Virus record (IMG/VR): IMGVR_UViG_3300014914_000030
Coordinates: 1-28,549 of that record
Direction: 5' to 3' (one strand)
Length of the DNA: 28,549 bases
In this document: one piece after another, positions 1 through 28,549 of the stretch
Layout of the letters: each line of letters starts with the position of its first letter
Numbering within the stretch: position 1 is the first letter of the stretch
Made by a program: the position numbers and the translations under genes
Notes under the pieces: model-generated
Databases searched by the model: none
Seen by the model: only the letters and a program-made list of their open reading frames with translations
What the model was told of the DNA's origin: nothing

Positions 1-123
1 AGGATTTTGTGGTTGTATGTCGAGGATATTGAATTTTTAATTACGGAAAGCTTGAAATTACAAAAGCTTTAGGCATGAGAATAAGGAGTGGTCAAGTCTA
101 TAGCAGTAGCAGAGGAGAGAAGG
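1..123. repeat. Left inverted terminal repeat (123 bp)
   Basis: Bases 1..123 are the exact reverse complement of 28427..28549; the match breaks at 124 (A versus G). Confidence 0.98.
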
Positions 124-136
124 AAAGAGATAAATG

Positions 137-152
137 TAACATGTACGTGTTA
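137..152. promoter_or_regulatory. Near-palindrome TAACATGTACGTGTTA, candidate RHH operator
   Basis: 16-bp palindrome with one mismatched pair, just inside the ITR and upstream of an RHH gene. Confidence 0.4.
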
Positions 153-185
153 ATAGTCTAAGGTAGAAGGGGGGTATCGAGGACA

Positions 186-494
186 TTGTTAAACAAGGAT
201 AGGATGGAACATCTTTCTTGCTACATTCCGAGGAAACACATCGAGGAATTGGATAAGCTTGTTAGGAAGGGAGTTTATCCAAGTAGGTCTGAGGCTATCA
301 GAGAAGCCATTAGAAGACTTCTAAGGATTCATGGTGAGGAGAATCTTGTCAAGGTGGTCTGTGATTGCTGTAATGGAGATGGTTTCATTGTACGCCGAAA
401 ACACCTTACTGGTGAGGAAGTCAAAGTCAGATGTCCTTGCTGTGATGGTCTAGGATATGATTATGAGGTTGAGTGGAAGGAGAGGGAGAAATGA
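186..494 (+). CDS. CopG/NikR-type ribbon-helix-helix regulator with C-terminal Cys-rich zinc finger
   Basis: SCYIPRKHIEELDKLVRKGVYPSRSEAIREAIRRLL is a typical RHH; CDCCNGDG and CPCCDGLG are DnaJ-like CxxCxGxG motifs. Confidence 0.85.
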   Translation: MLNKDRMEHLSCYIPRKHIEELDKLVRKGVYPSRSEAIREAIRRLLRIHGEENLVKVVCDCCNGDGFIVRRKHLTGEEVKVRCPCCDGLGYDYEVEWKEREK

Positions 495-691
495 AGTATC
501 CTAAGCTCAAGAGACCGTCTAGGCGTTGCTACCAGACCCATGCCTACTGTAGAAGGTGCGGTAACTGGATTCCGAAAAGTCAGCTAGACATGTCTAATCC
601 TAGATGTCCAGTATGCGGAAATAGGTTTCTGAGATTTAAGCCTAAGCACAACCCCTTCAAGGAGAAGTACGTTAGCTACATTGAGGTCTAA
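491..691 (+). CDS. Small zinc-ribbon protein (Rpo12-like pattern)
   Basis: YCRRCG-x13-RCPVCGNRFL; ATG at 491 overlaps the upstream stop (ATGA). Confidence 0.7.
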   Translation: MKYPKLKRPSRRCYQTHAYCRRCGNWIPKSQLDMSNPRCPVCGNRFLRFKPKHNPFKEKYVSYIEV

Positions 692-909
692 GGGTCTTCA
701 AGTAGGTCTTTGGCTTCCTTGATTACCTTTTCCCATTGTTTTTCTATTTTTTCTGGATTAGTCTCATAAGTCTCCCATAACTCATCTATTGCGTCTATGA
801 GTTCTCTGAACTCCTTGAATTTCCTTCTTGCTTTCTTGTATTTTGCTCCTAGATAGATTGAGGCTACTAGGAGTATTAAGGTGATGATTTGCAGTATTAT
901 TTGCTCCAT
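688..909 (-). CDS. Small membrane protein (N-terminal TM plus charged helices); possible egress protein
   Basis: Hydrophobic IILQIITLILLVASIYLGA then a basic/charged helical tail; GGGGAG SD upstream. Confidence 0.7.
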   Translation of the reverse strand: MEQIILQIITLILLVASIYLGAKYKKARRKFKEFRELIDAIDELWETYETNPEKIEKQWEKVIKEAKDLLEDP

Positions 910-940
910 GCTTGTCTCCCCTTTAGTTCTTAGATTTAGT

Positions 941-1765
941 TCAGATACTTATACCTTCAGAACGCCATTTATCAAAGTATTTCTTGTAGCCAGTTGCCTC
1001 TTCGTATTCCTCTGCACTCAAATCTCTTAGATTTGCCCCTTTATACTTGCCAGTTTGTATGATTCTACTTGGTCTTTTGTCTGGGTTGTCTCTTGCTTCC
1101 AATATATTAAGCAGATTTTCAACTGGAGTTATTACTGTTAGCCTTTCTATTGGGAAGTTTGTTCTTGGGTCAACTGCTAGTGGTGTGTTTTCCTCAAGCA
1201 TTATGGCTGGAATGTAATCGTTTAGCCTATGGTCAAAAACTTCACAAGCATAGGAGCTTAAGGATTTGATTCTTGAAGGAAGTGAAGTTTGCAGTTCACG
1301 TTTCCATGCTGGGATACTAGGATTATTGAATCGTTTAGGTGTCCATAAGGGTTCACTTAGCTTAAATCCACTATAACCATAAACCCCAGTATGAGCATCG
1401 CCAGTATTTTGATAGAAAGCTACTGAACCGTAAAGGGAGTTTGTTAGCACTTTCATAGTTCCTAATGTCTCATATCTAACTAGATGTCCATAATTAGGGT
1501 TGTCTGTTCCTTCTCTAAATCTATCTTTATGACATCTACGTGTTGTTCCATCATAATCAAAATACATTATCGTAAGCTGGTAGCCTACTCCTATATTGTA
1601 GAGAGACCAGTCAATCCATACCAGCCATGTTTCGTTTGGTGGTGGTTGTATATCTACATAAGTTGTACTACCACTAGGAACGCTAATGCTCCCTTGAGTC
1701 TGTTTGATTATTGCACTCCAGAATGGGAATTTTGGTGGTGGGGGTAGTCCATGCCAAAGGCTCAT
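941..1765 (-). CDS. Putative virion/adhesin protein with N-terminal beta-sandwich
   Basis: 274-aa ORF in an operon; N-terminal VDIQPPPNETWLV motif shared with 2818..3111. Confidence 0.7.
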   Translation of the reverse strand: MSLWHGLPPPPKFPFWSAIIKQTQGSISVPSGSTTYVDIQPPPNETWLVWIDWSLYNIGVGYQLTIMYFDYDGTTRRCHKDRFREGTDNPNYGHLVRYETLGTMKVLTNSLYGSVAFYQNTGDAHTGVYGYSGFKLSEPLWTPKRFNNPSIPAWKRELQTSLPSRIKSLSSYACEVFDHRLNDYIPAIMLEENTPLAVDPRTNFPIERLTVITPVENLLNILEARDNPDKRPSRIIQTGKYKGANLRDLSAEEYEEATGYKKYFDKWRSEGISI

Positions 1766-1780: not shown

Positions 1781-2149
1781 TTAGATTTCTTCCATTATTT
1801 GGTATATGAATGTGTATGGGAATGTTCTTAGGTCTCCAGCCGTTTGGGTTATTGTTACTCTGAATTTTCCGTTGTAGGGTACTGTTTGGCTTGTGATTCT
1901 GACTACTGGGACTTCTTGTGCGTCTTTGAAGGTTAGTTTGTCTTGTAGTCTCTGGTTTGTTCCATCTACTGCAACATAGACTTTGATGACAACTTCATCT
2001 CCAGATTGCATGTTTGCTAGGTCTATTGTTCCTTCGATGATGTAGTCATCATCTTGGTCTGGTAGGTTGATGAGGTCTGTTTCCGTGTTTAGGCTTTCTG
2101 GTGTAACTGAGCCTTGACTACGTACTTTGTCTTTAAATCTAACTACCAT
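1781..2149 (-). CDS. Beta-rich putative virion structural protein
   Basis: 122 aa, alternating beta-strand pattern, co-oriented with tail-collar-like gene. Confidence 0.65.
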   Translation of the reverse strand: MVVRFKDKVRSQGSVTPESLNTETDLINLPDQDDDYIIEGTIDLANMQSGDEVVIKVYVAVDGTNQRLQDKLTFKDAQEVPVVRITSQTVPYNGKFRVTITQTAGDLRTFPYTFIYQIMEEI

Positions 2150-2159: not shown

Positions 2160-2735
2160 TCACCTTGACATTTGTACGTAGTATCTTATTGTGAGTGTGT
2201 CTCCAGCATCCCAATCTACTGGTACGGCTGAGAATACCTTTCTTGCTAGCATGTCTCCACCAGAGCTTGCATTGAAGATTCCAGTTTCTGATATGTTCAT
2301 TGAGCCAGACAGACCGTCATCTTTTGAGAATGTAGCTTCTAGAAGGGCTGTATCATCCGTGATTGTTGTGGTTGTTTGGGATACTGAGGCTGATTTTCTG
2401 GCTACTTCGTATTCTAGGGCTGTGTCTGTAGCTGATTCTGAGGTTGTTCCAGAGCCTATGGCTAGGTAGCCGAATTTGTCTTCTGTTAGACCAGCAAAGA
2501 TTAGTCTGACCATGCAAGCTAGACCTACGTTAGTTATGATGTTCTTTCTAAAGTAGAAGTCTCCTTCTTTTGCTGGAAAGCTTGTCAAAATTGGTACTGG
2601 ATTTCCTTTCATTATTGCTTTTGGTGGTGCTCCAGCCTTGTATTTGATGTTTCCGTTTTTGTCTCTGACTATAATTTCTATCCATCCTTGTACTTTTGTT
2701 GTGTCAACATCTTTGGGAATCTTCTTTTCAGTCAT
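2160..2735 (-). CDS. Phage tail-collar fibre-like protein (DUF3751-like)
   Basis: NIITNVG...YLAIGSG...TDTALEYEVARK...ISETGIFNASSGGDMLAR...GDTLTIRY follows the tail-collar consensus order. Confidence 0.75.
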   Translation of the reverse strand: MTEKKIPKDVDTTKVQGWIEIIVRDKNGNIKYKAGAPPKAIMKGNPVPILTSFPAKEGDFYFRKNIITNVGLACMVRLIFAGLTEDKFGYLAIGSGTTSESATDTALEYEVARKSASVSQTTTTITDDTALLEATFSKDDGLSGSMNISETGIFNASSGGDMLARKVFSAVPVDWDAGDTLTIRYYVQMSR

Positions 2736-2817: not shown

Positions 2818-3111
2818 TTGGCTGTAGGAGACGTAGTTTCTGACCTTGTTTCAGTATCAGCTAATGGAACTTTAGACATTCAGCCACCATCTGGAGAAGA
2901 GTGGGTTATCCACAACATCTACCATGAGTATGACATAGAAGTAGTCTTTACTGATGGTACTAATGAGTTGTCTTTCTTAACGCATGAGGGGAAAGGTGTT
3001 CTTTCAAAATTTGCTTTCCATGTTAGGAATGGTTTGTGGATTAGGGTTAAGAATTTGGATTCTGCAAATTCTAGGCTTATTGGGTATGATGGAGTGGTAA
3101 CCAAGGCATGA
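2818..3111 (+). CDS. Small beta-sandwich putative virion protein
   Basis: 97 aa, LDIQPPSGEEWVI motif; stop overlaps next start (ATGA). Confidence 0.7.
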   Translation: MAVGDVVSDLVSVSANGTLDIQPPSGEEWVIHNIYHEYDIEVVFTDGTNELSFLTHEGKGVLSKFAFHVRNGLWIRVKNLDSANSRLIGYDGVVTKA

Positions 3112-3533
3112 ATGACATAATTACTCCAGAGACCCTTTTGCAGAGAATCGTTATAGCCTTGAAGTTTGGCTCTGAAGGGGCTACAACTACAAGCACAAGC
3201 TATGTTACGATTGCTGATAGTGATATTGCATTTGACCCTCAGAAAATTAAGAAAGCTATGCCTAATCGTAAGCTCTATGCCAAATTCATTTATCATTTAA
3301 AGAACGATACGGATGGTGAGAAAACTTACGCTAGGATTTATAGGCAAAATGCTGGGACTCCAGTTGATGGGAGTGAGGTTTCTGTTACTGGTGCTGGATG
3401 GGGGATAGTGGAAACTGATTGGATAGATTTTTCGGATGAAAGTGAGGAAAGCTATCAAGTTCAGATGTATGTTACTGGTGGTGTTGGAGAATACAATAGC
3501 ATTATTATGTTGCTGACTAATATTAAGTTCTAG
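3108..3533 (+). CDS. Putative receptor/carbohydrate-binding beta-sandwich virion protein
   Basis: TTTSTSYVTI, beta-rich, translationally coupled to neighbours. Confidence 0.6.
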   Translation: MNDIITPETLLQRIVIALKFGSEGATTTSTSYVTIADSDIAFDPQKIKKAMPNRKLYAKFIYHLKNDTDGEKTYARIYRQNAGTPVDGSEVSVTGAGWGIVETDWIDFSDESEESYQVQMYVTGGVGEYNSIIMLLTNIKF

Positions 3534-3535
3534 CT

Positions 3536-4849
3536 ATGATATGCTTGGTTAGTTTACCGTTTAAGGTGAATCTTGTTTCTCCTTTGAGTTTAGCAATTTT
3601 GAAGGCTTTAATTCCAGAATATGATTCTGTTTGTGTAGATTTATCCCCAGAGTTTAATCAATGTTTCATGAGATGGGTTTTAAAAGACAAGATTGAGGAA
3701 CTCCATGAAGAGACCTATCGTAGGGATTTTTATCCAGTTGAGTTATTGTTAAAGGGAGAGGGAGATTCCGAGTTATACAGCATTTGTCATAGCATGGCTG
3801 ATAGGATTCTTTCGTATGACCCTAAAGTGGTGTGCTTTTCTGTTCAGCTAGGCAATATTGGGACTAGTCTAACTGTCGGCAAAATCCTCAAAGATGAAGG
3901 AATAAAAGTTATTTTTGGTGGGAGTGCTTTTCTGTGGAAATCCAAGATTTATGCAAGAATGTTTCCTTGGATTGATTGTGTTGTAGAGGGAGAGGCTGAG
4001 CCAGTTTTTAGGAGTTTAATCCATAAGGTTATAAAGGGATACAAAGTTCAGAGGTTCATCATTAGTCCTATGCTTCTTGACTTAAATGAGTCGCCTATTC
4101 CAGATTACGGAGACCTAAACTTAGATAATTACCAACTTATAGGCATTGAGACTCAGAGAGGTTGTGTCAATAGGTGTTCTTTTTGCAATAATAGATTTTC
4201 ACAGTTGTACGAAGTTTATAGAGAGAAAAAAGTTGAGAGAGTTAAAAGAGAACTTGAAATCTTGAAGGAATATAACAAGCCTTTCTATTTTTGCGATAAC
4301 ATCACAAATCCTAATAGGAAGAGGCTTATTTCGTTATGTAAGGCTATAGCTCCATTAGGCATAAAATGGATGGGGGAGTTTTTGCCTAGAATTAGTTTTC
4401 AAGAGGCATATTGGTTATGGAAAAGTGGTTGTTTTTCCGTTACTTTAGGAGTTGAAAGCCTATGCGATAGAACCTTGAGGAAAATGGAGAAGCCTATCAC
4501 AGTTAGGGATATTTTAAATTCCATTGAAGCCCTAAGCATGTTTGGAATAGACATTCAAGTAAATCTAATTATTGGTTACCCTAGAGAGAGTCTGCTTGAT
4601 TTCTTGCAGACGGTTGTAAGGTTGTTTAGGGTGGAAAATAAAGTTAAGAGGTTTCTTTTTTCTGAGTTTGTAGTACCTCAAAAATCAAAAATTTACAATA
4701 ATCCAGATAAATACGGAGTAAAATTGCTTTCTAAATGTGAAAACAGTATTTTTTCAAGAGCTTTTCAATTAAAAAGTGAGTGGGAAAGAAGAAAGCAGAA
4801 ATTCTTATTAATTTTTATGGAGCTTCTCTTCAATAGGGAGTCTTTATGA
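3536..4849 (+). CDS. B12-binding-domain radical SAM protein
   Basis: ETQRGCVNRCSFC (CxxxCxxC); N-terminal PLSLAILKA, VIFGG, VVEGEAE typical of cobalamin-dependent class B radical SAM; LGVES and IIGYPRES in the barrel. Confidence 0.92.
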   Translation: MICLVSLPFKVNLVSPLSLAILKALIPEYDSVCVDLSPEFNQCFMRWVLKDKIEELHEETYRRDFYPVELLLKGEGDSELYSICHSMADRILSYDPKVVCFSVQLGNIGTSLTVGKILKDEGIKVIFGGSAFLWKSKIYARMFPWIDCVVEGEAEPVFRSLIHKVIKGYKVQRFIISPMLLDLNESPIPDYGDLNLDNYQLIGIETQRGCVNRCSFCNNRFSQLYEVYREKKVERVKRELEILKEYNKPFYFCDNITNPNRKRLISLCKAIAPLGIKWMGEFLPRISFQEAYWLWKSGCFSVTLGVESLCDRTLRKMEKPITVRDILNSIEALSMFGIDIQVNLIIGYPRESLLDFLQTVVRLFRVENKVKRFLFSEFVVPQKSKIYNNPDKYGVKLLSKCENSIFSRAFQLKSEWERRKQKFLLIFMELLFNRESL

Positions 4850-5049
4850 AGGTAGCACAGTTCCGATTTGCTATTAGTCAAGAGGGTGGTGGAGAACACG
4901 TTATGTACAACATGGCTAGAGTTCTGAAGGCAAGCGTTTTAGCTTTTGCTGTAACATCAGGAAAACTAAAAAAGAAAGGATATATCAAGGAGATAGCCTC
5001 TGATGTTGACAAGTTGATTCTGACACATAATCGTTTGGTAAAGGTGTAA
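4846..5049 (+). CDS. N-terminal fragment of a GT4 glycosyltransferase
   Basis: MKVAQF...GGGEHVMYNMARVL is the canonical GT4 N-terminal beta/GG-E/helix motif that the downstream ORF lacks. Confidence 0.7.
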   Translation: MKVAQFRFAISQEGGGEHVMYNMARVLKASVLAFAVTSGKLKKKGYIKEIASDVDKLILTHNRLVKV

Positions 5050-5059
5050 AAGTGGTCTT

Positions 5060-6025
5060 ATGGAAACGTACACAAAGAATGAGATTGAATCAATTTTGAA
5101 ATTAAGAAGGCTCTTCAGAGATGAGATTCTAAAGGAATTTGATGGGGTTGATGTTGTTGTTTTGCATTGTCCTTGGGATTTAGAGGTTTTTGATGGAGTC
5201 AATGATAAGGCTGTTGTTTTGTATGAACATAGAGCTTGTAGATTTGCAACTTTCATGTTTGATGAGATAATCAAGTATGTTGAGCCTCTACGTGCAAGAT
5301 TAGTTATTCGTGATAGAGGGTGGGTTTTGCAGAAGCATAAAGAGTTGTTCAAGAAGGCTGATTTGATTATTGTTAATAGTAAGTTTATTCAAGAGCAAAT
5401 GCTGAAGTGGTTCGGAATTGAGACCTATGTTTGTTATCCACCTATTGATTTGAGGGTTTTTCGACCAGTTAAGAATCCAAGCAGAGATTTCTTTCTTTCC
5501 GCACAGAGGGTTAACTGGCAGAAAAGAATTGACCTTCAGATTGACGCTTTTCGTGGTCTGAAAGAGAGGCTGATTATTGTCGGTAGCCCTAATGAGCCAG
5601 AGCCTAATCCTACATTGGTAGAATTAGCTAAGGATTGTCCCAATATTGAGATTTTAGGTGGTGTGAAGTTAAAGGAGCTTGTTAATTTAATGGCAAATGC
5701 TAAGGCTGTTATTCAAACTGGTTACTATGAGGATTTTGGATTAGTCCCAGTTCAAGCTTTGGCTTGTGGTACTCCAGCTATAGTGGTTGATGAAGGGGGA
5801 TTTAGAGAGACCATTCATTCCCCAAAGCTTGGTGTCAGAATAAAAAAGCCTTATCTGGAAAACTTAAGAAAAGCTGTTTTGGAGTTTGATATTAGCAGAT
5901 ATGACCCTAAGATATTGAGGGAAGAAGCTAAAAAGTATGGGTTTACGGAATTTAGAAAAAGATTCAATAAGTTACTTAAACTTGCTGTGAGGAAACATGA
6001 GGAACGATATAATTTACGTAGATAG
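5060..6025 (+). CDS. GT4 (GT-B) glycosyltransferase, main part
   Basis: IIVNSKF, YPPID, KRIDL, EDFGLVPVQALACGTP, GGFRETI. Confidence 0.92.
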   Translation: METYTKNEIESILKLRRLFRDEILKEFDGVDVVVLHCPWDLEVFDGVNDKAVVLYEHRACRFATFMFDEIIKYVEPLRARLVIRDRGWVLQKHKELFKKADLIIVNSKFIQEQMLKWFGIETYVCYPPIDLRVFRPVKNPSRDFFLSAQRVNWQKRIDLQIDAFRGLKERLIIVGSPNEPEPNPTLVELAKDCPNIEILGGVKLKELVNLMANAKAVIQTGYYEDFGLVPVQALACGTPAIVVDEGGFRETIHSPKLGVRIKKPYLENLRKAVLEFDISRYDPKILREEAKKYGFTEFRKRFNKLLKLAVRKHEERYNLRR

Positions 6026-6524
6026 GGAAAGAGGTCTCAGAGTTAGAGAGGCTGATTTAAGTAAGGTCGAAGATTTGAAGATTTTAGCTAGAGCAATCAA
6101 AAGCGATTTTTTAGCTGGTAGAGAGACTCCAACTGCGGTAAATGACCCTTTCTACAGCAAGTTCTGGAGCTATTATCTAGAGCTAGGCTGGGATATGTTC
6201 TGTTATCATCATAACCCTACAAAAACTAAATTTTTCATTGTGCTTAAAGACATGAGAACGGTTGGGTTTGCCCGTGTTAAAGAACAAAAAATACTGGGAA
6301 ATAAGGTCTTTTATCCAACGATTTATGCTAATGAGCTTGAGTATCCTTGGAGTGAGATAACTAACGATATAAGGGTCTGCATTTTTAATATGTTAAGAAG
6401 ATTTGGTTTTGATAGAGTTTTTATTGAGCTTCCTTTTGGTCATGAACTTAATAGTAAGCTTCCTTTGAGGAAGATGGTAGTAAGATTTAAAGAGTTAACA
6501 GAAATATGGGAGATGGGTTCATGA
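5997..6524 (+). CDS. Hypothetical protein, GNAT-like fold
   Basis: LRVREAD..D start and KFFIVLKDMRTVGFARV beta-hairpin resemble GNAT; acetyl-CoA motif not clear. Confidence 0.5.
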   Translation: MRNDIIYVDRERGLRVREADLSKVEDLKILARAIKSDFLAGRETPTAVNDPFYSKFWSYYLELGWDMFCYHHNPTKTKFFIVLKDMRTVGFARVKEQKILGNKVFYPTIYANELEYPWSEITNDIRVCIFNMLRRFGFDRVFIELPFGHELNSKLPLRKMVVRFKELTEIWEMGS

Positions 6525-9656: not shown

Positions 9657-9659
9657 GGC

Positions 9660-19899: not shown

Positions 19900-19900
19900 T

Positions 19901-20041: not shown

Positions 20042-20045
20042 AGTT

Positions 20046-20906: not shown

Positions 20907-20909
20907 TTC

Positions 20910-21446: not shown

Positions 21447-21469
21447 TGTGTTCACCATGTAGTATATGG

Positions 21470-21535: not shown

Positions 21536-21560
21536 TTAAGTTAATTAGGGGGATGGAAAA

Positions 21561-22391: not shown

Positions 22392-22652
22392 AACAGCAAT
22401 TCCCTCATTGACCGTCTTTAGCTCACGTAAGACCTTCCCTATGTTGTTTCCCAGCTTAATCATGTTATGGTTCATCTCATTGAGAGCCTTTGTAATTTGA
22501 CTATTCTGTTCCAGCACAAGAGCAACAAGCAAAGTATTTAGCTCATTCCCTTTCAAACGCCTATTTCCTACAATTTCCTTGAACTTTTGAGCTATCGTAG
22601 GAGCAAACACGTCAATCAAGGTAGCTAGTACATCACCCATGCTCCTACTCAC
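22368..22652 (-). CDS. Hypothetical coiled-coil protein
   Basis: 94 aa helical; GGAG SD and TTAAAA promoter upstream. Confidence 0.65.
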   Translation of the reverse strand: MSRSMGDVLATLIDVFAPTIAQKFKEIVGNRRLKGNELNTLLVALVLEQNSQITKALNEMNHNMIKLGNNIGKVLRELKTVNEGIAVLLKRTES

Positions 22653-22708
22653 TCCTTTTCAAAATATTATCGTGAAAAACTATTTTAAGCCTTATCGGAA
22701 TGAGGGTC

Positions 22709-22780
22709 AGTTAGCCCATTTCCGAACATCGGGGAGATTTGGGGCGTAACTGTAGGTGTAATTTGGGGGTTGGGCTAACT
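22709..22780. repeat. 10-bp inverted repeat enclosing G-rich loop
   Basis: AGTTAGCCCA (22709..22718) / TGGGCTAACT (22771..22780). Confidence 0.7.
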
Positions 22781-22860
22781 TCATCATCCCATACTCTAAA
22801 ATTTTAGACAGAGACTTGAATTTTTTGTGGTTAAGGTTTATATTCAAAAAATAAAAAATA

Positions 22861-23580
22861 GTGAAATTGCGGTCTGCAAGCAGAAAATATAGGAGTTGTA
22901 GCATAAAAATGTTACGAACTGAAATGAGCCGTGAAGAATGTCTAGCATTATTATCTACTACTACTACTGACTGGGTTAAGGTCAGAGGCTTCTCAATTGA
23001 GCTTCTGCACCATCTCAGAGACAAGCAACTACTCCTATGTGAACTCTGCGAACTGACTGGAAAAGACCCCATTTACGTAAATGTCTATCTGAATCGCCTT
23101 AGACGGTACGGATTCGTTCAGAAAGACCGTTATTACTATAGAATAACTGAAATTGGAGTTGCTTTGCTTAATATACTTAATACACTTAATACACTTAAGT
23201 ACACAAAATATAACAGTTATATAACAGTTATTAAACAGAAATATAACAGAAATATAACAGAAAAAAGAGCTTCAAAGCAAGCTTCTTTGAGGCAAACTGG
23301 CTTGGAGCTTTGGCTTCAGAGTTGCGATTTGAGTGAGAAAGAGAAGGAAGTAGTAGAGGTACTGATAGACCATTACAACAAAACTGGCTCTAAATATCTG
23401 TATTTTGACACTCCATTCGACTTTGCAGAAAGATTCAAGATTAGTCCACAAATGGCTACTGAAGTACTAAAACGCCTAAAGCAAGACGGAATCATTTACG
23501 TGTTCAGAGACAGACAACTTGGCTCATGGAAGATAGGCTTAAAGTCAGCCTTCCTTGAAGCCCTCAAGCTCTCTCAATAA
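22861..23580 (+). CDS. Double winged-helix protein, candidate replication/origin-binding protein
   Basis: Two wHTH signatures (YLNRLRRYGFVQK..YYYRITEIG; VLKRLKQDGIIYV..WKI) joined by a repeat-encoded linker; true start may be 22909 or 22924. Confidence 0.75.
   Translation: MKLRSASRKYRSCSIKMLRTEMSREECLALLSTTTTDWVKVRGFSIELLHHLRDKQLLLCELCELTGKDPIYVNVYLNRLRRYGFVQKDRYYYRITEIGVALLNILNTLNTLKYTKYNSYITVIKQKYNRNITEKRASKQASLRQTGLELWLQSCDLSEKEKEVVEVLIDHYNKTGSKYLYFDTPFDFAERFKISPQMATEVLKRLKQDGIIYVFRDRQLGSWKIGLKSAFLEALKLSQ
23167..23260 (+). repeat. Tandem 9-bp (x4) and 11-bp (x5) AT-rich repeats, iteron-like
   Basis: CTTAATA(T/C)A x3 plus CTTAAGTACA at 23167..23203; AAATATAACAG, TTATATAACAG, TTATTAAACAG, AAATATAACAG, AAATATAACAG at 23206..23260. 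Confidence 0.9.
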
Positions 23581-23746
23581 TCGGAAAGATTAACATCCAA
23601 AAATCAAGCCTCTGCACGTTCTTTTTAGAGGGATAATACTGCAAAAAACACCTTTCACACATAGGAACTTTAGTTTTGTTCACAGCATCCCTAACATACG
23701 TATCTGTAGGCTCTCCACAAATAAAACAAGGAAACTTCTTTACCAA
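23564..23746 (-). CDS. Small zinc-finger protein
   Basis: CFICG...MCERC. Confidence 0.7.
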   Translation of the reverse strand: MVKKFPCFICGEPTDTYVRDAVNKTKVPMCERCFLQYYPSKKNVQRLDFWMLIFPIIERA

Positions 23747-24015
23747 TCTACATCACCAAGCCAGACCTCACTCTCTTTAGGGTAGTATCTCTTAGCTAAA
23801 GCCTTACGCAAAAGCTCATTCCCCCTCATTTTGCTGGTCAATGTATTAACAAGCTTCCTAGCTCTCCAGTACTTTCGGCGTAACCTATACAAAATGGTAT
23901 AGGCTGTACGTTCCTTAATACCAATAGCATGTGCAGAATCCTTGATGGTCAAATGCTCTCTCATAGCTTCAATCAACCTTTCCTCTAAAGGCGTAAGTAC
24001 CCTTTCTTCAGACAT
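23740..24015 (-). CDS. Helix-turn-helix protein
   Basis: LTPLEERLIE...TIKDSAHAIGIKERTAYTILYRLRRK; GGTGAGG SD. Confidence 0.85.
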   Translation of the reverse strand: MSEERVLTPLEERLIEAMREHLTIKDSAHAIGIKERTAYTILYRLRRKYWRARKLVNTLTSKMRGNELLRKALAKRYYPKESEVWLGDVDW

Positions 24016-24032
24016 AACCTCACCAAGCCAAA

Positions 24033-24055
24033 TTTATACATGCAGAATGTATAAA
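24033..24055. promoter_or_regulatory. Palindromic operator overlapping TATA box of HTH gene
   Basis: TTTATACAT-GCAGA-ATGTATAAA, perfect 9-bp arms. Confidence 0.65.
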
Positions 24056-24155
24056 AATCTTATGTCCGCAAAAAGACTTATCACAAATTCCGAAAGACTT
24101 CCACAAAAAAGTAATAAAAAAGCTGAAAAAAATAAGGGTACTTAACGTAGGTTAA

Positions 24156-24359
24156 CTACTCAACTTTTAGCTCTTCTATTAGCTCTTCGCAAGCTTCCTT
24201 GAACGGTAGCGGAATGAAGATAGCTACCACATGCATGTTCAACTTCTGGATTTTGTAGATTTTAGCCCAACCCCAGAACCCATTAAGGGCTTCTCCATTC
24301 TGAATACGCACTTGCTTAGAGTCTTTCACCATTACCTCATAATCAAGCTCTTCCATCAT
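24156..24359 (-). CDS. Hypothetical protein
   Basis: 67 aa, translationally coupled in the minus-strand operon. Confidence 0.6.
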   Translation of the reverse strand: MMEELDYEVMVKDSKQVRIQNGEALNGFWGWAKIYKIQKLNMHVVAIFIPLPFKEACEELIEELKVE

Positions 24360-24634
24360 TTCTCACTCTCCAATTTGGCTAATTCCGTATAGTTAGGCAT
24401 GTACTCCTTACAGATTTTAGCCAAATTCCAGACCTCAAAAGGCTTCCTTCCTTCCCATTGGTTGAGCAAAGGTGCAATAGCCCTATACAATGCACAGACA
24501 TTGACATGCTTACAGTACTTGCAACTCCTAGCGTCTTCAATCTCCACTTTAGGCATTCTAACAGTTAAGGTCATACTAGACCACTCTCCCTTACGTACAA
24601 GAGAAAGAGGGACAGAGTTCATGCTCTTGCTCAT
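24356..24634 (-). CDS. Cys-rich hypothetical protein
   Basis: SCKYCKHVNVC...ICKEY. Confidence 0.65.
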   Translation of the reverse strand: MSKSMNSVPLSLVRKGEWSSMTLTVRMPKVEIEDARSCKYCKHVNVCALYRAIAPLLNQWEGRKPFEVWNLAKICKEYMPNYTELAKLESEK

Positions 24635-24851
24635 ATTGTTCCTCTAAGACCTTCCTAATCTCAGAGGCTACCGTCTCAAGAGCCTTAGCAAGTATGTGGG
24701 TAGCGTCTAGCTGGATTACAATGCTGTAGTCTCCCTTTCTCGGTCTGTACTTCTCAATCCATAGATAAGGTGGATGGTAGTGTCCCTTGATAGTAAAGCG
24801 AATGCCTTGTACGGTTACAGAAATGTCCTTTCCTTCTCTTTCGACCTTCAT
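24591..24851 (-). CDS. Hypothetical protein
   Basis: 86 aa, beta-strands then helix; ATGA-coupled to upstream ORF. Confidence 0.6.
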   Translation of the reverse strand: MKVEREGKDISVTVQGIRFTIKGHYHPPYLWIEKYRPRKGDYSIVIQLDATHILAKALETVASEIRKVLEEQYEQEHELCPSFSCT

Positions 24852-25018
24852 TCTTTCAACCTCTGTATTTCCTTTAAGACAGTTCTAACGGTCTCCTCAA
24901 GGTTTGGATGTTCCCATCCGACACATAGTTGCACTAGCAGACTAGTATCATCCAATATTTTCTGGTAGTGGAATTTCGCTAAAGCCCTTGCATGTTTTCT
25001 AATCTCTTCATCCTTCAT
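24848..25018 (-). CDS. 56-aa hypothetical protein (not in ORF track)
   Basis: MKDEEIRKHARALAKFHYQKILDDTSLLVQLCVGWEHPNLEETVRTVLKEIQRLKE fills the operon gap exactly. Confidence 0.65.
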   Translation of the reverse strand: MKDEEIRKHARALAKFHYQKILDDTSLLVQLCVGWEHPNLEETVRTVLKEIQRLKE

Positions 25019-25021
25019 AGA

Positions 25022-25876
25022 CTAGACCACCGCAACTACTGGGCTTAAAATCTTGTGTAGCTCATCAAACATTCTGTTCTTGGTTACAATGTCTTGACGG
25101 ACATTATGCCAAATCCTCTCGGTAACATCATTGTAGGTATCCCAGACGGTCTTGGACTCATCGAACCACACAAGCTCAGTTCCTTCCGTCTTAATGTAAG
25201 GTGGTAACAGCTTTCTTGGAAGTCTGCTTTTAGCTATGCTCTCAGCAATTTCCTCATTAAGCTGAAGCTCAACCATCTTACGATAAGCCTCTAACACCTT
25301 CTCCATAGCATTGATTACATCCATTGTACGTTTCAGAATATTATCCATGTCAACCTTCAAGCCCTTAGTGTGCTTGTGGTAAAACCTCGCAAGCTCTCTG
25401 TAGCCCATGAAAACACCATTAGAGCACATTTCTCTATATGTGAATCCAGTAACGCTAAACGCTAGTGTTCCATCAATGCTGTTTCTGAAGGCAAATCCAA
25501 TCTTGCACCTATCCCTTCCGTCTATCTCATGCCATTCTGGGAGAGTATAGACCAAATAGACCTTCCAAGAATCCTTGCTGAAATAGGCGTTACCCCACTC
25601 AGTAGGTAGCCTAGTCTTCTCAAGCAGAGGCTCTGCATTCAGCCTACTAGCTATTTCATCAGCTACTTGCTTGACAACCTCATTAGGAAGAACTTGATAG
25701 CCCCTACCGACAATTGCTACAAGCCTTCCGTTCTTGAGAATAGCCTTGTAAGGTGTCTGCTTGTCATTGTATTTTAGGTATGCCTCTGTAATGTTGTATT
25801 CTTTCCAAGTCTCATCTATTTTACCTACATCAAATACAATCTTCATCTCGGACACGGCTACATCCCCCCTTTTCAT
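25022..25876 (-). CDS. DUF932/DUF945-like phage/plasmid protein
   Basis: IVGRGYQVLPNE, FRNSIDG, YREMCSNG, TVWDTYNDVTE match the family motif order. Confidence 0.8.
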   Translation of the reverse strand: MKRGDVAVSEMKIVFDVGKIDETWKEYNITEAYLKYNDKQTPYKAILKNGRLVAIVGRGYQVLPNEVVKQVADEIASRLNAEPLLEKTRLPTEWGNAYFSKDSWKVYLVYTLPEWHEIDGRDRCKIGFAFRNSIDGTLAFSVTGFTYREMCSNGVFMGYRELARFYHKHTKGLKVDMDNILKRTMDVINAMEKVLEAYRKMVELQLNEEIAESIAKSRLPRKLLPPYIKTEGTELVWFDESKTVWDTYNDVTERIWHNVRQDIVTKNRMFDELHKILSPVVAVV

Positions 25877-25994
25877 GTTAACTACATGTTAATATGCACC
25901 TAAGTCCTATAAAAACCTTTCTATTTGCATAAATTATACAAACACAAAAAAGGAAGCTATACAATACTTAAATACTCAGCTAGTCCAACATTAG

Positions 25995-26201
25995 TTGGTG
26001 AAAACAAAAATGTCCGAAGAAAGGAGATACGGAAGACCAAGGACAGACCAAGAAAGGCAACTTAGACACTTCCAGAGAACTGGAGAATTGCTCCCAATAG
26101 ACCAGCTACCCCCAAGAGGAACTGGACTCAAAACATGGAAACAGACCAGCACAAGTACTAGACCCATCCCCCTAAAAGAGCTAAGAAGACAACAGAGATA
26201 A
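25995..26201 (+). CDS. Small basic protein
   Basis: YGRPRTDQER..RH...LPPRGTGL; GGTGA SD before ATG at 26010, own TTAAATA promoter. Confidence 0.7.
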   Translation: MVKTKMSEERRYGRPRTDQERQLRHFQRTGELLPIDQLPPRGTGLKTWKQTSTSTRPIPLKELRRQQR

Positions 26202-26487: not shown

Positions 26488-26778
26488 ATGAATCCCATAC
26501 CATTGAAAGAATGGGAAAGACTCAGAAACTACACTCAGAAGCTTTCGGAAGGAGTAACTAGCGTACAAAACACTCTAGAAGCATACAAGCATGATGTGGA
26601 TGAAATTGTAAACACCTACATAGACCAAAACAAATGGCTAGAAAAAGTCAAAAATGCATGGGAATCCCAAAAAGTCAACCCTACTGCATGTGAGGAAGCT
26701 CTAAGAACACTAGATGAGCATAAACCAGTAACGCCTAAACCAGTACCAATTCCACTAAGCCAAATCAGAGCAAGATAA
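26488..26778 (+). CDS. Small helical protein
   Basis: 96 aa, AGGTGA SD, CCTTATAA promoter. Confidence 0.75.
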   Translation: MNPIPLKEWERLRNYTQKLSEGVTSVQNTLEAYKHDVDEIVNTYIDQNKWLEKVKNAWESQKVNPTACEEALRTLDEHKPVTPKPVPIPLSQIRAR

Positions 26779-26790
26779 AAAAAGGGAAAG

Positions 26791-27270
26791 TTAAGGCTTA
26801 GCTGTTATAATCAAGTCTGGTCGAATAGCTAATCTTTTCCCTACCTTGCACTCCTCAAGCTCAATGAACTCATTGAACTCCTCAACAACCTCTCTAGTTA
26901 TGTCCTTGTAGAAGGCTTTAGCTTCATGGTATAATCCACTATCATCATAGTCTCCTACAAGGTAAATCTCATCTCCAGCCCATCTTCCACAAGTCTTAAA
27001 CCTTCCTTTCCCTAGAGGAGTCCTAGAAATTCTGCTTATAGTCTCTAAAGCCTTTTCCTTAGTCTTCTTGTCTTTTGCATCCCAGTAGAGCCTCTCAGCC
27101 TCTTTAAACTCTGGCTCAAAGTTGCACATGCCAGTACCATCCATTGGAGCTTTAGCTACTAGCCAGCACAGAAGTCTAGCCTCGTTATTAGCAAGCCATT
27201 CCCAGAGCTTAGAGCCACCTTTAACGTACTCCTTTTTGGTCTTATTTACAAGTAGGAAGTACTGCCCCAT
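26791..27270 (-). CDS. Conserved viral hypothetical protein (MGQY...GRWAGD..VGDY type)
   Basis: Motifs MGQYFLLVNKTKKEY and GRWAGDEIYLVGDY; strong promoter upstream. Confidence 0.8.
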   Translation of the reverse strand: MGQYFLLVNKTKKEYVKGGSKLWEWLANNEARLLCWLVAKAPMDGTGMCNFEPEFKEAERLYWDAKDKKTKEKALETISRISRTPLGKGRFKTCGRWAGDEIYLVGDYDDSGLYHEAKAFYKDITREVVEEFNEFIELEECKVGKRLAIRPDLIITAKP

Positions 27271-27299
27271 CTCTACTTAACCCCCCTAATAACCATAAT

Positions 27300-27325
27300 A
27301 CCCTTAAGGGTATATAAACCTTTTG
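27300..27325 (-). promoter_or_regulatory. Strong BRE/TATA promoter followed by palindrome TACCCTTAAGGGTA
   Basis: Minus strand AAAAGGTTTATATACCCTTAAGGGTA. Confidence 0.7.
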
Positions 27326-27373
27326 CAATTACACAAAATCGAAAAAGATAAAAAATTGGGAAATTTTGGGAGC

Positions 27374-28357
27374 TTAGCTCAGCATGTCAAGGATTTTCTG
27401 TTTAGCCTTAGCCTTGTAGTCTTCCAATAGCTGTTTTACTTGACTTCTGAGTGCTTCAGCCTTAGCTCTGAGCTTTTCGTAAATCTCCCTATCCCAGTAG
27501 CTATAAATGGCTTCTATGAGTATTCTCCTAAACTCTTCTGGTACGTAAGCAACTAGTGAATCAAGCTCTACAATATACTCATGCTCATAATTCTTGTACC
27601 TTGGGTCTCTCTGCAATTTGGCTAAGGTTTCTGCGTCTTCTGGTCTAGGTGGAAGGTTGTACTTCCTAACTTGCTCTGGAGTAACAGCAAGCCTTATCAG
27701 TTGCACCTTATCCTCTGGAAGACCAAAATAGTCTAAGGCTTCCTTGAGAAACCTCTCAATGTCAACTCCAGAAGGGTCTAAGTCTCCCAAGTACAATATA
27801 ATGACTTTATCATGTTTCTCAAGCTCATACCTCAATGCTTGAACATTGTTGTAGATAAATGTCCAGCTTGAATATCCTCTGTTAACCCTTATCAAAACTC
27901 CTAGTCCTTCTGTCCAGTTTTGAATTGTAGAGCTTAAAGCTTCCTTCTCTATCCAAATCTCAACTGCATAAGGCTGTTCTGCCCATCTACCGACAGTTAT
28001 GAAAGGCTGTAGGTAGTCAAAGGTTTCTGCTAGCATTTTGTCAATGTCAAGCTCTTCAAGTCTCTGCTTTAGGGTCTCCTCAAACCTTTCAACCTCATCA
28101 TCTCTGAATCTTCCATCATCAATATTTCCATAGACAAGTCTGGTTTTGTCCTCAAGGAAATCCCACTCATATCTCCCTTGCTTCCTAGCATTAACTAGCT
28201 TCCTTGACAGTTGCTTGTAGCTACTCCTTGTGTTTGGAATTATGTTCTTGCTGACCAAGTAGTAGAACAATGTTCTAAGTGTAGGCTTGACTCCTTGACT
28301 ACTGAAGTACCTTAAAGCTTCATCCACATGTTCTAGTACTTCTCCCCAATTTATCAC
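27374..28357 (-). CDS. Topoisomerase VI-A/Spo11-related (Mini-A-like) WHD-TOPRIM protein
   Basis: TLRTLFYYLV (catalytic Tyr region), VEIWIEKEAL, RGYSS, ILYLGDLDPSG (DxD), VELDSL; probable GTG start at 28357 with GGTGA SD. Confidence 0.82.
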   Translation of the reverse strand: MINWGEVLEHVDEALRYFSSQGVKPTLRTLFYYLVSKNIIPNTRSSYKQLSRKLVNARKQGRYEWDFLEDKTRLVYGNIDDGRFRDDEVERFEETLKQRLEELDIDKMLAETFDYLQPFITVGRWAEQPYAVEIWIEKEALSSTIQNWTEGLGVLIRVNRGYSSWTFIYNNVQALRYELEKHDKVIILYLGDLDPSGVDIERFLKEALDYFGLPEDKVQLIRLAVTPEQVRKYNLPPRPEDAETLAKLQRDPRYKNYEHEYIVELDSLVAYVPEEFRRILIEAIYSYWDREIYEKLRAKAEALRSQVKQLLEDYKAKAKQKILDMLS

Positions 28358-28426
28358 CTTAATCACCGTAATATACTTAAGTGCATTAGGTGTATATAAG
28401 CATTGTGGTCTAGTCCACAACCAAAC

Positions 28427-28549
28427 CCTTCTCTCCTCTGCTACTGCTATAGACTTGACCACTCCTTATTCTCATGCCTAAAGCTTTTGTAATTTCAAGC
28501 TTTCCGTAATTAAAAATTCAATATCCTCGACATACAACCACAAAATCCT
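28427..28549. repeat. Right inverted terminal repeat (123 bp)
   Basis: Exact reverse complement of 1..123. Confidence 0.98.

What the first reader, a model, noticed from the sequence alone, without database searches (positions are those of the whole stretch)
1..28549. Apparently complete genome of a divergent rod/filamentous archaeal virus, probably of an anaerobic host
Seen: 123-bp ITRs bound the window and there is only one MCP gene. Known: a single SIRV2-fold MCP (homodimer) is typical of rigid rudivirus-like virions, whereas lipothrix- and tristromaviruses have two. Inference: the termini lack the AATTTAGG repeats of Sulfolobales rudiviruses, gene content differs, and an oxygen-sensitive B12 radical SAM gene points to an anaerobic, non-Sulfolobales host and possibly a new lineage.
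Basis: partly seen in the sequence, partly recalled or inferred. Interest (0 to 1): 0.8.

Follow-up and report, generated by a model that had tools for sequence, protein, structure and literature searches.

The report
Guaymas rod-shaped archaeal virus, Chiyouvirus relative
The window is a nearly complete genome of an uncultivated rod-shaped archaeal virus from Guaymas Basin hydrothermal sediment; it belongs to the same capsid lineage as the recently named family Chiyouviridae, so it is not a wholly new lineage, and its 123-base terminal repeats are stubs cut by the assembler.

Summary
The window (IMGVR_UViG_3300014914_000030) is bounded by a perfect 123-nt inverted repeat. It carries one SIRV2-fold capsid gene (19047-19421, minus strand) and an intact radical SAM gene.

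Two points need correction.

First, completeness is not shown. A k=141 re-assembly of the same virus is identical but extends 18 nt past both ends, giving a 141-nt ITR. An unrelated virus in the same JGI assembly also has an ITR of exactly 123 nt. ITR length therefore follows assembler k-mer size. The true ITR is at least 141 nt and its outer part is missing.

Second, this is not a new family-level lineage. Its capsid protein is 65% identical to that of Chiyouvirus (Chiyouviridae, ICTV 2025) and sits with it in a well-supported clade apart from Rudiviridae (33-36% identity). Thirteen of 46 genes, including a collinear structural block, are shared with Chiyouvirus, against four with SIRV2.

'One MCP' holds with nuance. 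The 441-aa minor structural protein has an MCP-like C-terminal bundle. The 122-aa protein is the stand-alone jelly-roll half of Chiyouvirus's second 'MCP'.

An anaerobic, non-Sulfolobales host is likely. The sample and the relatives support this better than the radical SAM gene does; that gene sits in a mobile glycan-tailoring cassette.

The parts
1..123 (.). Left inverted terminal repeat (inner 123 nt only; the outer part is missing)
   Evidence: It is 100% complementary to 28427-28549. The k141 re-assembly extends it by 18 nt to 141 nt. An unrelated contig of the same assembly also has an ITR of exactly 123 nt.
186..494 (+). Ribbon-helix-helix (CopG-type) transcription regulator
   Evidence: PF01402 at E=4.4e-9.
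941..1765 (-). 274-aa protein of unknown function, unique to this virus among the fetched relatives
   Evidence: No Pfam or PHROG hit. No tblastn hit in relatives.
1781..2149 (-). 122-aa single jelly-roll protein. It is the stand-alone counterpart of the C-terminal domain of Chiyouvirus_23 ('second MCP'). It is a probable virion or fibre component.
   Evidence: It is 37.5% identical to residues 169-245 of Chiyouvirus_23. The AF2 model has pLDDT 97.2 and eight strands. Foldseek returns jelly-roll hits such as Ena fibres, IBDV VP2, phage cement proteins and tail-fibre tips. More than 190 relatives exist, nearly all 120-123 aa.
2160..2735 (-). 191-aa tail-fibre / tail-collar-like protein, homologue of Chiyouvirus_21
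   Evidence: phrog_5417 at E=2.4e-19 and phrog_4176 (tail fibre) at E=2.3e-12. It is 37% identical to Chiyouvirus_21. The paper's table annotates that gene as a potential terminal fibre.
3108..7420 (+). Mobile glycan-tailoring cassette. Gene order: 141-aa protein, B12-type radical SAM (3536-4849), 67-aa protein, GT4 glycosyltransferase (5060-6025), 175-aa protein, GT2-like glycosyltransferase (6506-7420).
   Evidence: Pfam and NCBIfam hits. CxxxCxxC at C210. Five of the six genes (all but the 175-aa ORF), in nearly the same order and at 39-54% identity, occur in two unrelated MGE contigs, L024 and L025. They occur in no fetched adnavirus relative.
7443..10157 (+). 737-aa protein with a weak methyltransferase-like signal, followed by a 165-aa SAM-dependent methyltransferase (9660-10157)
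   Evidence: For the 165-aa protein, PF13489 and PF08241 at E about 1e-8. The 737-aa protein has only weak hits. A 96%-ANI variant has a 949-aa version.
10154..10855 (-). 233-aa accessory gene, present in the window but absent in a 96%-ANI variant
   Evidence: The blastn alignment with L043 jumps from 10152 to 10864. Homologues occur in L025 (40%) and in L022/L029 (34%).
10862..19001 (-). Conserved virion and glycosylation block. Genes: GT4 (10862-11932, SIRV2 gp44-like), 112 aa, 63 aa, 1217-aa terminal-fibre/P1070-like protein (12465-16118), 92 aa, 108 aa, 441-aa minor structural protein with an MCP-like C-terminal bundle (16637-17962), GT4 (17979-19001, SIRV2 ORF335-like).
   Evidence: It is collinear with Chiyouvirus genes 15-20 at 39-65% identity and with about ten other relatives. 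The 1217-aa protein hits tape-measure PHROGs, phrog_7334 and the SIRV2 ORF1070 C-terminus. The 441-aa family profile against the MCP profile gives hhalign 80% probability and E=1.4e-5, aligning residues 332-418 to MCP 44-123.
19047..19421 (-). Major capsid protein (SIRV2 fold), the only one in the window
19501..21635 (.). Conserved small-gene cluster next to the MCP gene. Genes: 132 aa (+), 49-aa RHH-like (+, Chiyouvirus_12 homologue), 112 aa (+), 84-aa membrane protein with three hydrophobic segments (-), Hjc-like PD-(D/E)xK nuclease (20562-20906, -), 241 aa (-).
   Evidence: tblastn to Chiyouvirus and other relatives. PF01870 (Hjc) at E=1.3e-4, 22.2 bits against a cutoff of 21.1. Weak alignment to the SIRV2 resolvase, with D37 and Q52-x-K54.
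21951..26167 (.). Variable region with a coiled-coil/wHTH protein (21951-22391), a double winged-helix protein (22861-23580), a run of small ORFans on the minus strand, and a DUF932 protein (25022-25876)
   Evidence: Pfam hits. There are almost no homologues in relatives.
23167..23263 (.). Two adjacent tandem arrays, 9 nt x 4 and 11 nt x 5.3, inside the double-wHTH ORF. The first resembles a subterminal sequence at 28374-28395.
   Evidence: TRF result. Inverted pair I21. Sequence.
26791..28462 (-). 159-aa and 362-aa proteins of unknown function. The 362-aa protein is 65% identical to a gene of the co-occurring 30-kb virus.
   Evidence: No family or PDB hit. tblastn to L022 and L029.
28427..28549 (.). 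Right inverted terminal repeat (inner 123 nt only)

Best explanation
The window holds the whole unique region, plus the inner 123 nt of each terminal repeat, of a linear dsDNA rod-shaped archaeal virus of the realm Adnaviria, order Ligamenvirales.

Classification (shown): it belongs to the large, mostly uncultivated capsid clade that contains Chiyouvirus (family Chiyouviridae). Within that clade it is a distinct species, probably a distinct genus. It comes from Guaymas Basin hydrothermal sediment.

How it most likely works (inferred from homology to rudiviruses):
- Homodimers of the single 124-aa SIRV2-fold capsid protein wrap the DNA into a rigid, non-enveloped rod.
- The virion ends carry the 1217-aa P1070-like protein, the 441-aa MCP-derived minor protein and small conserved partners.
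- A 191-aa fibre protein and a 122-aa jelly-roll protein serve for attachment.
- Three GT4 enzymes, a GT2-like enzyme, methyltransferases and a class-B-like radical SAM enzyme build and tailor glycans. The targets are virion proteins or the host surface.
- The host replisome copies the genome from the terminal repeats.
- An Hjc-like nuclease resolves the replication intermediates.

The host is an unidentified anaerobic thermophilic archaeon.
For: MCP fold and family.

Clade placement:
- The window MCP is 65% identical to the Chiyouvirus MCP. P0055 lies on the 26867-nt contig Ga0212120_1000794, which is Chiyouvirus in the paper's tables.
- In the IQ-TREE analysis, Rudiviridae are split off by a branch of length 2.14 with 100/100 support. 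Chiyouvirus and the window fall in one 98/96 subclade.

Gene sharing:
- 13 of 46 genes are shared with Chiyouvirus at a mean identity of about 47%, in a collinear block.
- 4 of 46 are shared with SIRV2 or SMRV1.

Single MCP.

MCP-like domain in the 441-aa protein. This agrees with PMC13700489 and bioRxiv 10.1101/2025.08.23.671958.

Jelly-roll protein.

Termini. The Chiyouvirus ITR spans at least 511 nt, because mirrored HTH genes lie at 176-511 and 26357-26692.

Environment:
- The same assembly holds the contig identical in length to 'Archaeoglobales archaeon B35_G2 B35_Guay2_scaffold_00106'.
- Variants at about 96% ANI occur in three other samples.

Archaeal-type TATA/BRE-like boxes lie upstream of the first genes of operons.
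Against: - Only 28% of genes are shared with Chiyouvirus.
- The fused MCP-like plus jelly-roll gene, the Cas2 homologue and the mini-CRISPR arrays of Chiyouvirus are absent.
- The official genome-wide proteomic tree was not run.
- PBV300 (Ahmunviridae) could not be fetched, so a closer tie to that family is not excluded.
- Virion shape, A-form DNA, homodimer packing, hairpin ends and every enzymatic role are inferred, not shown.
- The Hjc match is borderline, and a Q sits where the third acidic residue is expected.
- No replication initiator was recognised.
- No host was identified. MAG bins that hold relatives are taxonomically scattered.
Confidence: 0.8

Rival explanations
1. One reading: a complete genome that founds a new family-level lineage of rod-shaped archaeal viruses.
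For: - There is no nucleotide match to 50,697 phage and archaeal-virus records.
- About 70% of the genes have no homologue in Chiyouvirus or the rudiviruses.
- It differs from Chiyouvirus in having a single MCP gene and in carrying the radical SAM cassette.
Against: - The MCP nests with the Chiyouviridae exemplar.
- The structural block is collinear with it.
- ITR length follows assembler k, so the termini are incomplete.
Confidence: 0.1
2. It belongs with Ahmunviridae (Methanophagales virus PBV300, order Maximonvirales), or between Ahmunviridae and Chiyouviridae, and infects ANME-1 or related Guaymas/Pescadero archaea.
For: - It comes from the same kind of habitat.
- Papers report that PBV300 also has an MCP next to a glycosyltransferase, an MCP-plus-beta-domain protein and an MCP-derived larger protein (PMC13700489; bioRxiv 10.1101/2025.08.23.671958).
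- A Pescadero contig (L035) carries a 58%-identical MCP.
Against: - No protein named for PBV300 appeared among the 127 MCP relatives.
- PBV300 is 41.5 kb.
Confidence: 0.08
3. It is a highly divergent member of Rudiviridae.
For: - It has a single MCP matching PF12193 and adjacent to a GT4 gene.
- It has homologues of SIRV2 ORF335, ORF356 and ORF1070.
- It has an Hjc-like nuclease.
Against: - MCP identity is 33-36%, and the MCP sits in a separate clade across a long branch.
- Only 4 of 46 genes are shared.
- No homologue was found for the rudiviral Rep, the ORF131b/ORF436/ORF207 replication genes or the P98 pyramid protein.
Confidence: 0.02
4. The inverted repeats are a pure assembly artefact, and the element is not a linear ITR-bounded genome.
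For: ITR length equals assembler k in both assemblies.
Against: - Two assemblers join the same repeat to two different unique flanks, with the same inner boundary.
- Relatives, including Chiyouvirus, have long ITRs.
- The pattern is what a de Bruijn graph gives for a real ITR longer than k.
Confidence: 0.03

Closest known systems
[quoted passage not shown]
   Same: - MCP is 65% identical and in the same supported clade.
- Both have the collinear block MCP, GT4, ~440-aa minor structural protein, ~91 aa, large P1070-like protein, 112 aa, GT4.
- Both have a fibre protein, a jelly-roll domain, and RHH and 112-aa genes beside the MCP.
- Both have ITR-bounded linear genomes of about 27-28 kb.
   Different: - Only 13 of 46 genes are shared, at a mean identity of about 47%.
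- Chiyouvirus fuses an MCP-like domain to the jelly-roll (gene 23). The window keeps only the jelly-roll as a 122-aa protein.
- The window has no Cas2 homologue and no mini-CRISPR arrays.
- The window has the radical SAM/GT cassette.
- The habitat is marine hydrothermal sediment, not a terrestrial hot spring.
Rudiviridae (SIRV2, SMRV1, SSRV1)
   Same: - SIRV2-fold MCP encoded as a single gene, probably forming a homodimer.
- Two conserved GT4 genes and a P1070-like terminal protein.
- A SAM methyltransferase and an Hjc-type nuclease.
- RHH regulators and a linear genome with ITRs.
   Different: - MCP identity is 33-36%, in a separate clade.
- Only 4 of 46 genes are shared.
- No rudiviral Rep, Cas4-like nuclease or P98 egress protein was detected.
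- No AATTTAGG terminal motif occurs in the part of the ITR that is present.
- The habitat is not a Sulfolobales habitat.
Ahmunviridae (Methanophagales virus PBV300, OP413840)
   Same: According to the cited papers, it is a hydrothermal-sediment rod-shaped virus with ITRs, an MCP next to a glycosyltransferase, and MCP-derived extra proteins that include an MCP plus an eight-strand beta domain.
   Different: PBV300 is 41.5 kb and is placed in another order. The sequences could not be compared here.
Class B (cobalamin-dependent) radical SAM methyltransferases
   Same: - The CxxxCxxC cluster motif is present.
- An N-terminal Rossmann-like region gives a weak B12-binding match.
- The best NCBIfam hits are B12-rSAM families (TIGR04072, TIGR03975, PhpK).
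   Different: - Every family score lies far below its cutoff (88.6 bits against a cutoff of 360 for the best hit).
- The substrate is unknown.
- The context is a GT4/GT2 glycan cassette on mobile elements.

Membership tests
Adnaviria / Tokiviricetes | Alpha-helical SIRV2-fold major capsid protein | tested here: met
   - PF12193 at E=1.3e-20.
- Profile against PDB 3J9X at E=2.5e-22.
- The AF2 model matches 3J9X and 6WQ0 at TM 0.70 and probability 1.0, and 3F2E at rmsd 1.1 A.
Adnaviria / Tokiviricetes | Linear dsDNA genome packed as A-form DNA in a helical rod or filament | not testable with these tools
   ITRs indicate a linear genome. DNA form and virion shape need microscopy.
Chiyouviridae | MCP groups with the family exemplar | tested here: met
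   65% identity. They share a 98/96 subclade inside a 100/100 clade that is separate from Rudiviridae.
Chiyouviridae | Shared, collinear core gene block with the exemplar | tested here: met
   Thirteen genes at 37-65% identity. The order MCP, GT4, 441 aa, 92 aa, 1217 aa, 112 aa, GT4 is kept.
Chiyouviridae | Family-level grouping in a genome-wide proteomic tree or gene-sharing network, the ICTV criterion used in the proposal | not tested
   VICTOR, ViPTree and vConTACT with ICTV exemplars were not available. Only 28% of genes are shared, so genus-level separation is likely and the family call is provisional.
Chiyouviridae | Second MCP-like gene (MCP-like N-terminal domain fused to a jelly-roll), as in the exemplar | tested here: not met
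   Only the jelly-roll half is present, at 1781-2149. No homologue of the N-terminal half was found by tblastn at E<10 or by HMM. This feature describes the exemplar and is not a stated demarcation criterion.
Rudiviridae | MCP and core gene set group with rudiviruses | tested here: not met
   MCP identity is 33-36% and the clade is separate. Only 4 of 46 genes are shared with SIRV2 or SMRV1.
Rudiviridae | Long ITRs with the AATTTAGG-type terminal motif | tested here: inconclusive
   The motif is absent from the 141 nt of ITR that are known. The outer ITR is missing.
Lipothrixviridae / Ungulaviridae / Tristromaviridae | Two paralogous MCPs forming a heterodimer, with an enveloped virion | tested here: not met
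   There is one MCP gene and only about four small proteins with hydrophobic segments. An envelope cannot be excluded from sequence alone.
Ahmunviridae | Grouping with PBV300 by MCP and gene content | not testable with these tools
   OP413840 is not in the collections. No PBV300-named protein appeared among the MCP relatives.
'Samediviridae' (Thermococcales filamentous viruses) | Core replication set of PCNA, an MCM-like protein, AEP PriS and an AAA+ wHTH protein | tested here: not met
   None of these domains was found in any window protein by Pfam. The family description is in the supplement of PMC12934983.
Class B radical SAM methyltransferase | CxxxCxxC [4Fe-4S] motif plus an N-terminal cobalamin-binding domain | tested here: inconclusive
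   The motif is present at C210-C214-C217. PF04055 is met at 55.8 bits. PF02310 scores 21.4 bits, below its 32.1 cutoff, although close relatives carry the precomputed PF02310 hit. All NCBIfam families score far below their cutoffs.
Archaeal Holliday junction resolvase (Hjc) | Hjc-family match with the catalytic E...D...E-x-K residues | tested here: inconclusive
   PF01870 scores 22.2 bits against a 21.1 cutoff. The alignment to the SIRV2 resolvase shows E11, D37 and K54, but Q52 sits in place of the third acidic residue. There is no PDB sequence hit.

The most novel reading that the evidence does not exclude
The window may represent a marine hydrothermal-sediment genus, or even a subfamily, of Chiyouviridae-like viruses with three departures from the exemplar:
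- It has reverted to a single-MCP capsid.
- It has split the ancestral 'MCP-like + jelly-roll' protein, keeping only a very strongly conserved free jelly-roll subunit as a new virion component.
- It has captured a cobalamin/radical-SAM glycan-tailoring cassette that would place an unusual (for example C-methylated) sugar on the virion. As far as I know, no radical SAM enzyme has been described in Adnaviria (from memory, not searched).
Probability: 0.25. Interest if true: 0.55.

Novelty: new member of a known kind. Interest (0 to 1): 0.35.

Why it matters
- Chiyouviridae currently has one species, from a hot spring. This genome and the more than 120 related capsid clusters show that the lineage is large and also common in anoxic marine hydrothermal sediments.
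- It gives a clean case of an ITR called 'complete' whose length is only the assembler's k-mer. This matters for completeness flags in viral databases.
- The mobile radical SAM/glycosyltransferase cassette and the free jelly-roll protein are concrete, testable leads on how these virions are built and decorated.

Tried and rejected
- Megablast of 25 kb against INPHARED phages gave no match.
- Search for a second MCP:
  - hhalign of every ORF against the MCP profile, hmmsearch of all 145 ORFs of at least 40 aa, and tblastn with Chiyouvirus_23 and with the second MCP of QMZE01000010. All returned only the known MCP.
  - The 122-aa candidate suggested by the Chiyouvirus_23 hit is a jelly-roll, not an MCP.
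- Fetching Chiyouvirus from viral contigs with its own protein failed. It was reached through the look-up of encoding contigs instead.
- Search for the outer ITR: a scan of JGI metagenome contigs with window 1-40 found only the window's own contig. Close variants (L043-L045) do not reach the termini.
- PBV300 could not be fetched.
- Literature search for the sample, run and contig identifiers gave no paper.
- Function of the 362-aa, 284-aa, 737-aa and 441-aa proteins: PDB sequence searches found nothing. PHROGs and NCBIfam added little.
- No tRNA, no Rfam family and no CRISPR-like array were found.
- The bacterial promoter scan is uninformative for an archaeal virus.
- Host from MAG bins was rejected as evidence. 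The bins holding relatives span Archaeoglobales, Thermoprotei, Culexarchaeia, Aenigmatarchaeota, Korarchaeia and even 'Deltaproteobacteria'.
- The 70.5-kb contig carrying a related MCP looked viral around the gene and was not pursued.

Full report
**What the window is.** The window is the public contig IMGVR_UViG_3300014914_000030, also known as JGI Ga0164311_10000123. It is 28,549 nt long with about 40% G+C. It is densely coded, with about 46 genes. It has no tRNA, no Rfam match and no CRISPR-like array.

**The termini.**
- Arms 1-123 and 28427-28549 are perfectly complementary. The repeat exists and cannot be due to chance.
- Its length, however, is not biological. The same virus was assembled independently as ENA ERZ27227318 k141_1565922 (28,585 nt). 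That contig is identical to the window over all 31 kb compared. It runs 18 nt further at both ends, giving a perfect 141-nt ITR with the same inner boundary.
- As a control I examined a different virus from the same JGI assembly, IMGVR_UViG_3300014914_000026 (30,061 nt). Its ITR sequence is unrelated yet is also exactly 123 nt. Its k141 version is again 36 nt longer, at 30,097 nt.
- An ITR equal to the largest k-mer is what a de Bruijn assembler produces when the true repeat is longer than k. The unique part is output with k bases of the collapsed repeat on each side. That 123 was the largest k of the JGI MEGAHIT runs of that period is from my memory. The two-virus control does not depend on it.
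- The true ITR is therefore at least 141 nt. The outer part is missing and its length is unknown. Chiyouvirus has mirrored HTH genes at 176-511 and 26357-26692, so its ITR is at least 511 nt. SMRV1 has an annotated ITR of 1,240 nt.
- A scan of JGI metagenome contigs for the first 40 nt found only the window itself. The outer piece was not recovered.
- AATTTAGG occurs once, at 7044. With the outer ITR missing, absence of the rudiviral terminal motif is not established.

**The capsid protein.**
- ORF 19047-19421 (-) matches PF12193 at E=1.3e-20.
- It is 33-36% identical to all rudiviral MCPs over about 90-97% of its length.
- A profile of 36 relatives hits the SIRV2 virion structure 3J9X at E=2.5e-22, and also hits SSRV1, AFV1 and SFV1 capsid proteins.
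- The AlphaFold2 model (pLDDT 77.6) has a long N-terminal helix followed by a helical bundle.
- Foldseek ranks 3J9X and 6WQ0 first, at TM 0.70 and probability 1.0. The C-terminal bundle superposes on 3F2E at 1.1 A.
- The refutation test 'MCP fails to model as the SIRV2 fold' is therefore not met.

**One MCP or two?**
- Several searches found no second copy. These were hhalign of all ORFs against the MCP profile, hmmsearch of 145 ORFs where the next-best E was 2.1, and tblastn with second MCPs of relatives.
- First nuance. Chiyouvirus gene 23, annotated as a second 'SIRV2-like MCP', has two parts. Its N-terminal roughly 120 aa are MCP-like (hhalign 63% probability from a single sequence). Its C-terminal domain is homologous to the window's 122-aa protein at 1781-2149 (37.5% identity).
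  - That 122-aa protein models at pLDDT 97 as an eight-stranded jelly-roll.
  - Its Foldseek neighbours are generic: Ena fibre subunits, birnavirus VP2, phage cement proteins and fibre tips.
  - It is as conserved as the MCP, at 60-76% identity across more than 190 clusters, nearly all 120-123 aa.
  - It lies next to a 191-aa tail-fibre-like gene.
  - The window's lineage therefore keeps the jelly-roll as a free protein and lacks the MCP-like half.
- Second nuance. The 441-aa minor structural protein (16637-17962) has 120 representative relatives. Its profile aligns residues 332-418 to the MCP C-terminal bundle at hhalign probability 80% and E=1.4e-5. This fits reports that this protein family contains MCP-like domains (PMC13700489; bioRxiv 10.1101/2025.08.23.671958).

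**Relatives and classification.**
- The MCP has 127 relatives clustered at 90% identity, nearly all 124 aa, at 54-94% identity.
- One of them, P0055, is 65% identical to the window MCP. It sits on Ga0212120_1000794 (26,867 nt). The supplement of Duan et al. 2024 lists that contig as Chiyouvirus (PMC10848311). Chiyouvirus was ratified in 2025 as Wargodvirus xiongnu, family Chiyouviridae, order Ligamenvirales (PMC12451623).
- An IQ-TREE analysis of 49 MCPs separates six rudiviruses by a branch of length 2.14 with 100/100 support. It places Chiyouvirus and the window in one 98/96 subclade.
- tblastn of 46 window proteins finds 13 homologues in Chiyouvirus at 37-65% identity, with a mean of about 47%. 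Ten of them lie in the collinear region 10862-21635. Only four homologues are found in SIRV2 or SMRV1: two GT4 enzymes, the MCP and the C-terminus of ORF1070.
- Other fetched relatives share the same core at similar identities. None is much closer, apart from variants at about 96% ANI in three other samples.
- The window is therefore a distinct species, probably a distinct genus, inside the Chiyouvirus-type lineage. It is not a new family-level lineage.
- Two caveats remain. PBV300 (Ahmunviridae) could not be obtained. The formal proteomic-tree criterion was not run.
- 'Samediviridae' is excluded by its PCNA/MCM/PriS core, which is absent here.

**The radical SAM gene and the host.**
- The 437-aa protein has PF04055 and an intact CxxxCxxC motif. 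Its B12-domain match is sub-threshold. All NCBIfam B12-rSAM families score far below their cutoffs.
- It has only nine close relatives, at 34-48% identity, all unnamed.
- In two of them (L024 and L025) it sits in nearly the same cassette as here: 141-aa protein, small ORF, rSAM, GT4, a protein of about 150 aa, GT2. These contigs share nothing else with adnaviruses and gave no MCP hit.
- The gene is thus part of a horizontally mobile glycan-tailoring module. My best guess is a C-methylation or a related radical modification of a sugar that the neighbouring glycosyltransferases attach. This is inference.
- Radical SAM and cobalamin-dependent enzymes also occur in aerobes, so the gene alone says little about oxygen.
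- The habitat does say something. The same assembly contains the contig deposited as 'Archaeoglobales archaeon B35_G2, B35_Guay2_scaffold_00106'. That places the sample in Guaymas Basin hydrothermal sediment.
- Chiyouvirus itself is tied by two spacers to a Bathyarchaeia MAG.
- MAG bins that hold relatives are too scattered to name a host.
- Archaeal-type TATA/BRE-like boxes precede several first genes of operons.

**Mechanism: what is shown and what is inferred.**
- Shown: the capsid fold, the conserved structural block, the jelly-roll fold, the ITR junctions and the cassette mobility.
- Inferred from rudivirus biology:
  - homodimeric packing of A-form DNA into a rigid rod;
  - terminal fibres made of the 1217-aa protein, whose N-terminal third resembles tape-measure proteins and whose C-terminus resembles SIRV2 ORF1070;
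  - glycosylation of virion proteins;
  - replication by host enzymes from the ITRs, with resolution by the Hjc-like nuclease. That nuclease is a borderline match with Q52 in place of an acidic residue.
- No replication initiator and no egress protein was recognised.

**Verdict.** The finding is real and well observed, but it is over-interpreted on completeness and on novelty. It is a new member of a known, recently named kind. It has a few features of moderate interest.

Noticed in passing
window 23167-23263: Two adjacent tandem arrays lie inside the double winged-helix ORF 22861-23580, between its two DNA-binding domains: CTTAATACA x4, then AAATATAACAG x5.3. The 11-nt period is not a multiple of three. 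The first array resembles a subterminal sequence at 28374-28395. They may be binding sites (iterons) and not merely a coding linker.
   Followed up: partly
L054/L055 = IMGVR_UViG_3300014914_000026 (30061 nt); also L022, L029, L046: A second adnavirus is present in the same sample. Its MCP is 67% identical to the window's and at least 16 genes are shared. Its ITR sequence is unrelated but is also exactly 123 nt. It was deposited in a MAG called Archaeoglobales archaeon B35_G2.
   Followed up: yes
L028 and L038 (QMZE01000010.1, 16.3 kb): One relative's contig carries two MCP-family genes about 13 kb apart. They are 72% and 48% identical to the window MCP, and the second is extended to 184 aa. 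MCP copy number therefore varies within this clade.
   Followed up: partly
QMZE01 contigs L028, L029, L032: A single 'Archaeoglobales' MAG holds at least three different adnavirus contigs. This could be binning of viral contigs by composition, or it could be a real host signal.
   Followed up: no
window 10154-10855 compared with L043: A variant at about 96% ANI from a sister sample lacks the 233-aa gene. It also has a 949-aa protein where the window has 737 aa, and a 1257-aa protein where the window has 1217 aa. These are recent indels in accessory and fibre genes.
   Followed up: partly
L044:1-465 compared with window 22224-22688: In another variant, this segment is inverted and joined next to position 21467. 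This indicates a local rearrangement in the variable region.
   Followed up: no
L024 (Logan SRR7051073, 32 kb) and L025 (JGI 3300006469, 21 kb): Two related mobile elements of unknown type are dense in small ORFs and gave no MCP hit. They carry the same rSAM/GT4/GT2 cassette. L025 also has a 917-aa protein that fuses three methyltransferase domains to a glycosyltransferase.
   Followed up: partly
L026 (ENA ERZ23491050, 70.5-kb scaffold): A 75%-identical MCP lies on a 70.5-kb scaffold, more than twice the usual genome size. The locus includes an 1884-aa fibre-like protein and a gene with a faint RAMP hit. It could be a chimeric scaffold, a dimer, or a much larger relative.
   Followed up: no
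window 20562-20906: The Hjc-like nuclease has D37 and K54 in place but Q52 where the third acidic residue is expected. The Pfam score is just above threshold.
   Followed up: partly
Chiyouvirus table in the supplement of PMC10848311: In the rows for Chiyouvirus2, the label 'Major capsid protein, SIRV2-like' sits on the 433-aa gene (2261-3562) and not on the 249-aa gene. This looks like a one-row shift in the published table.
   Followed up: no
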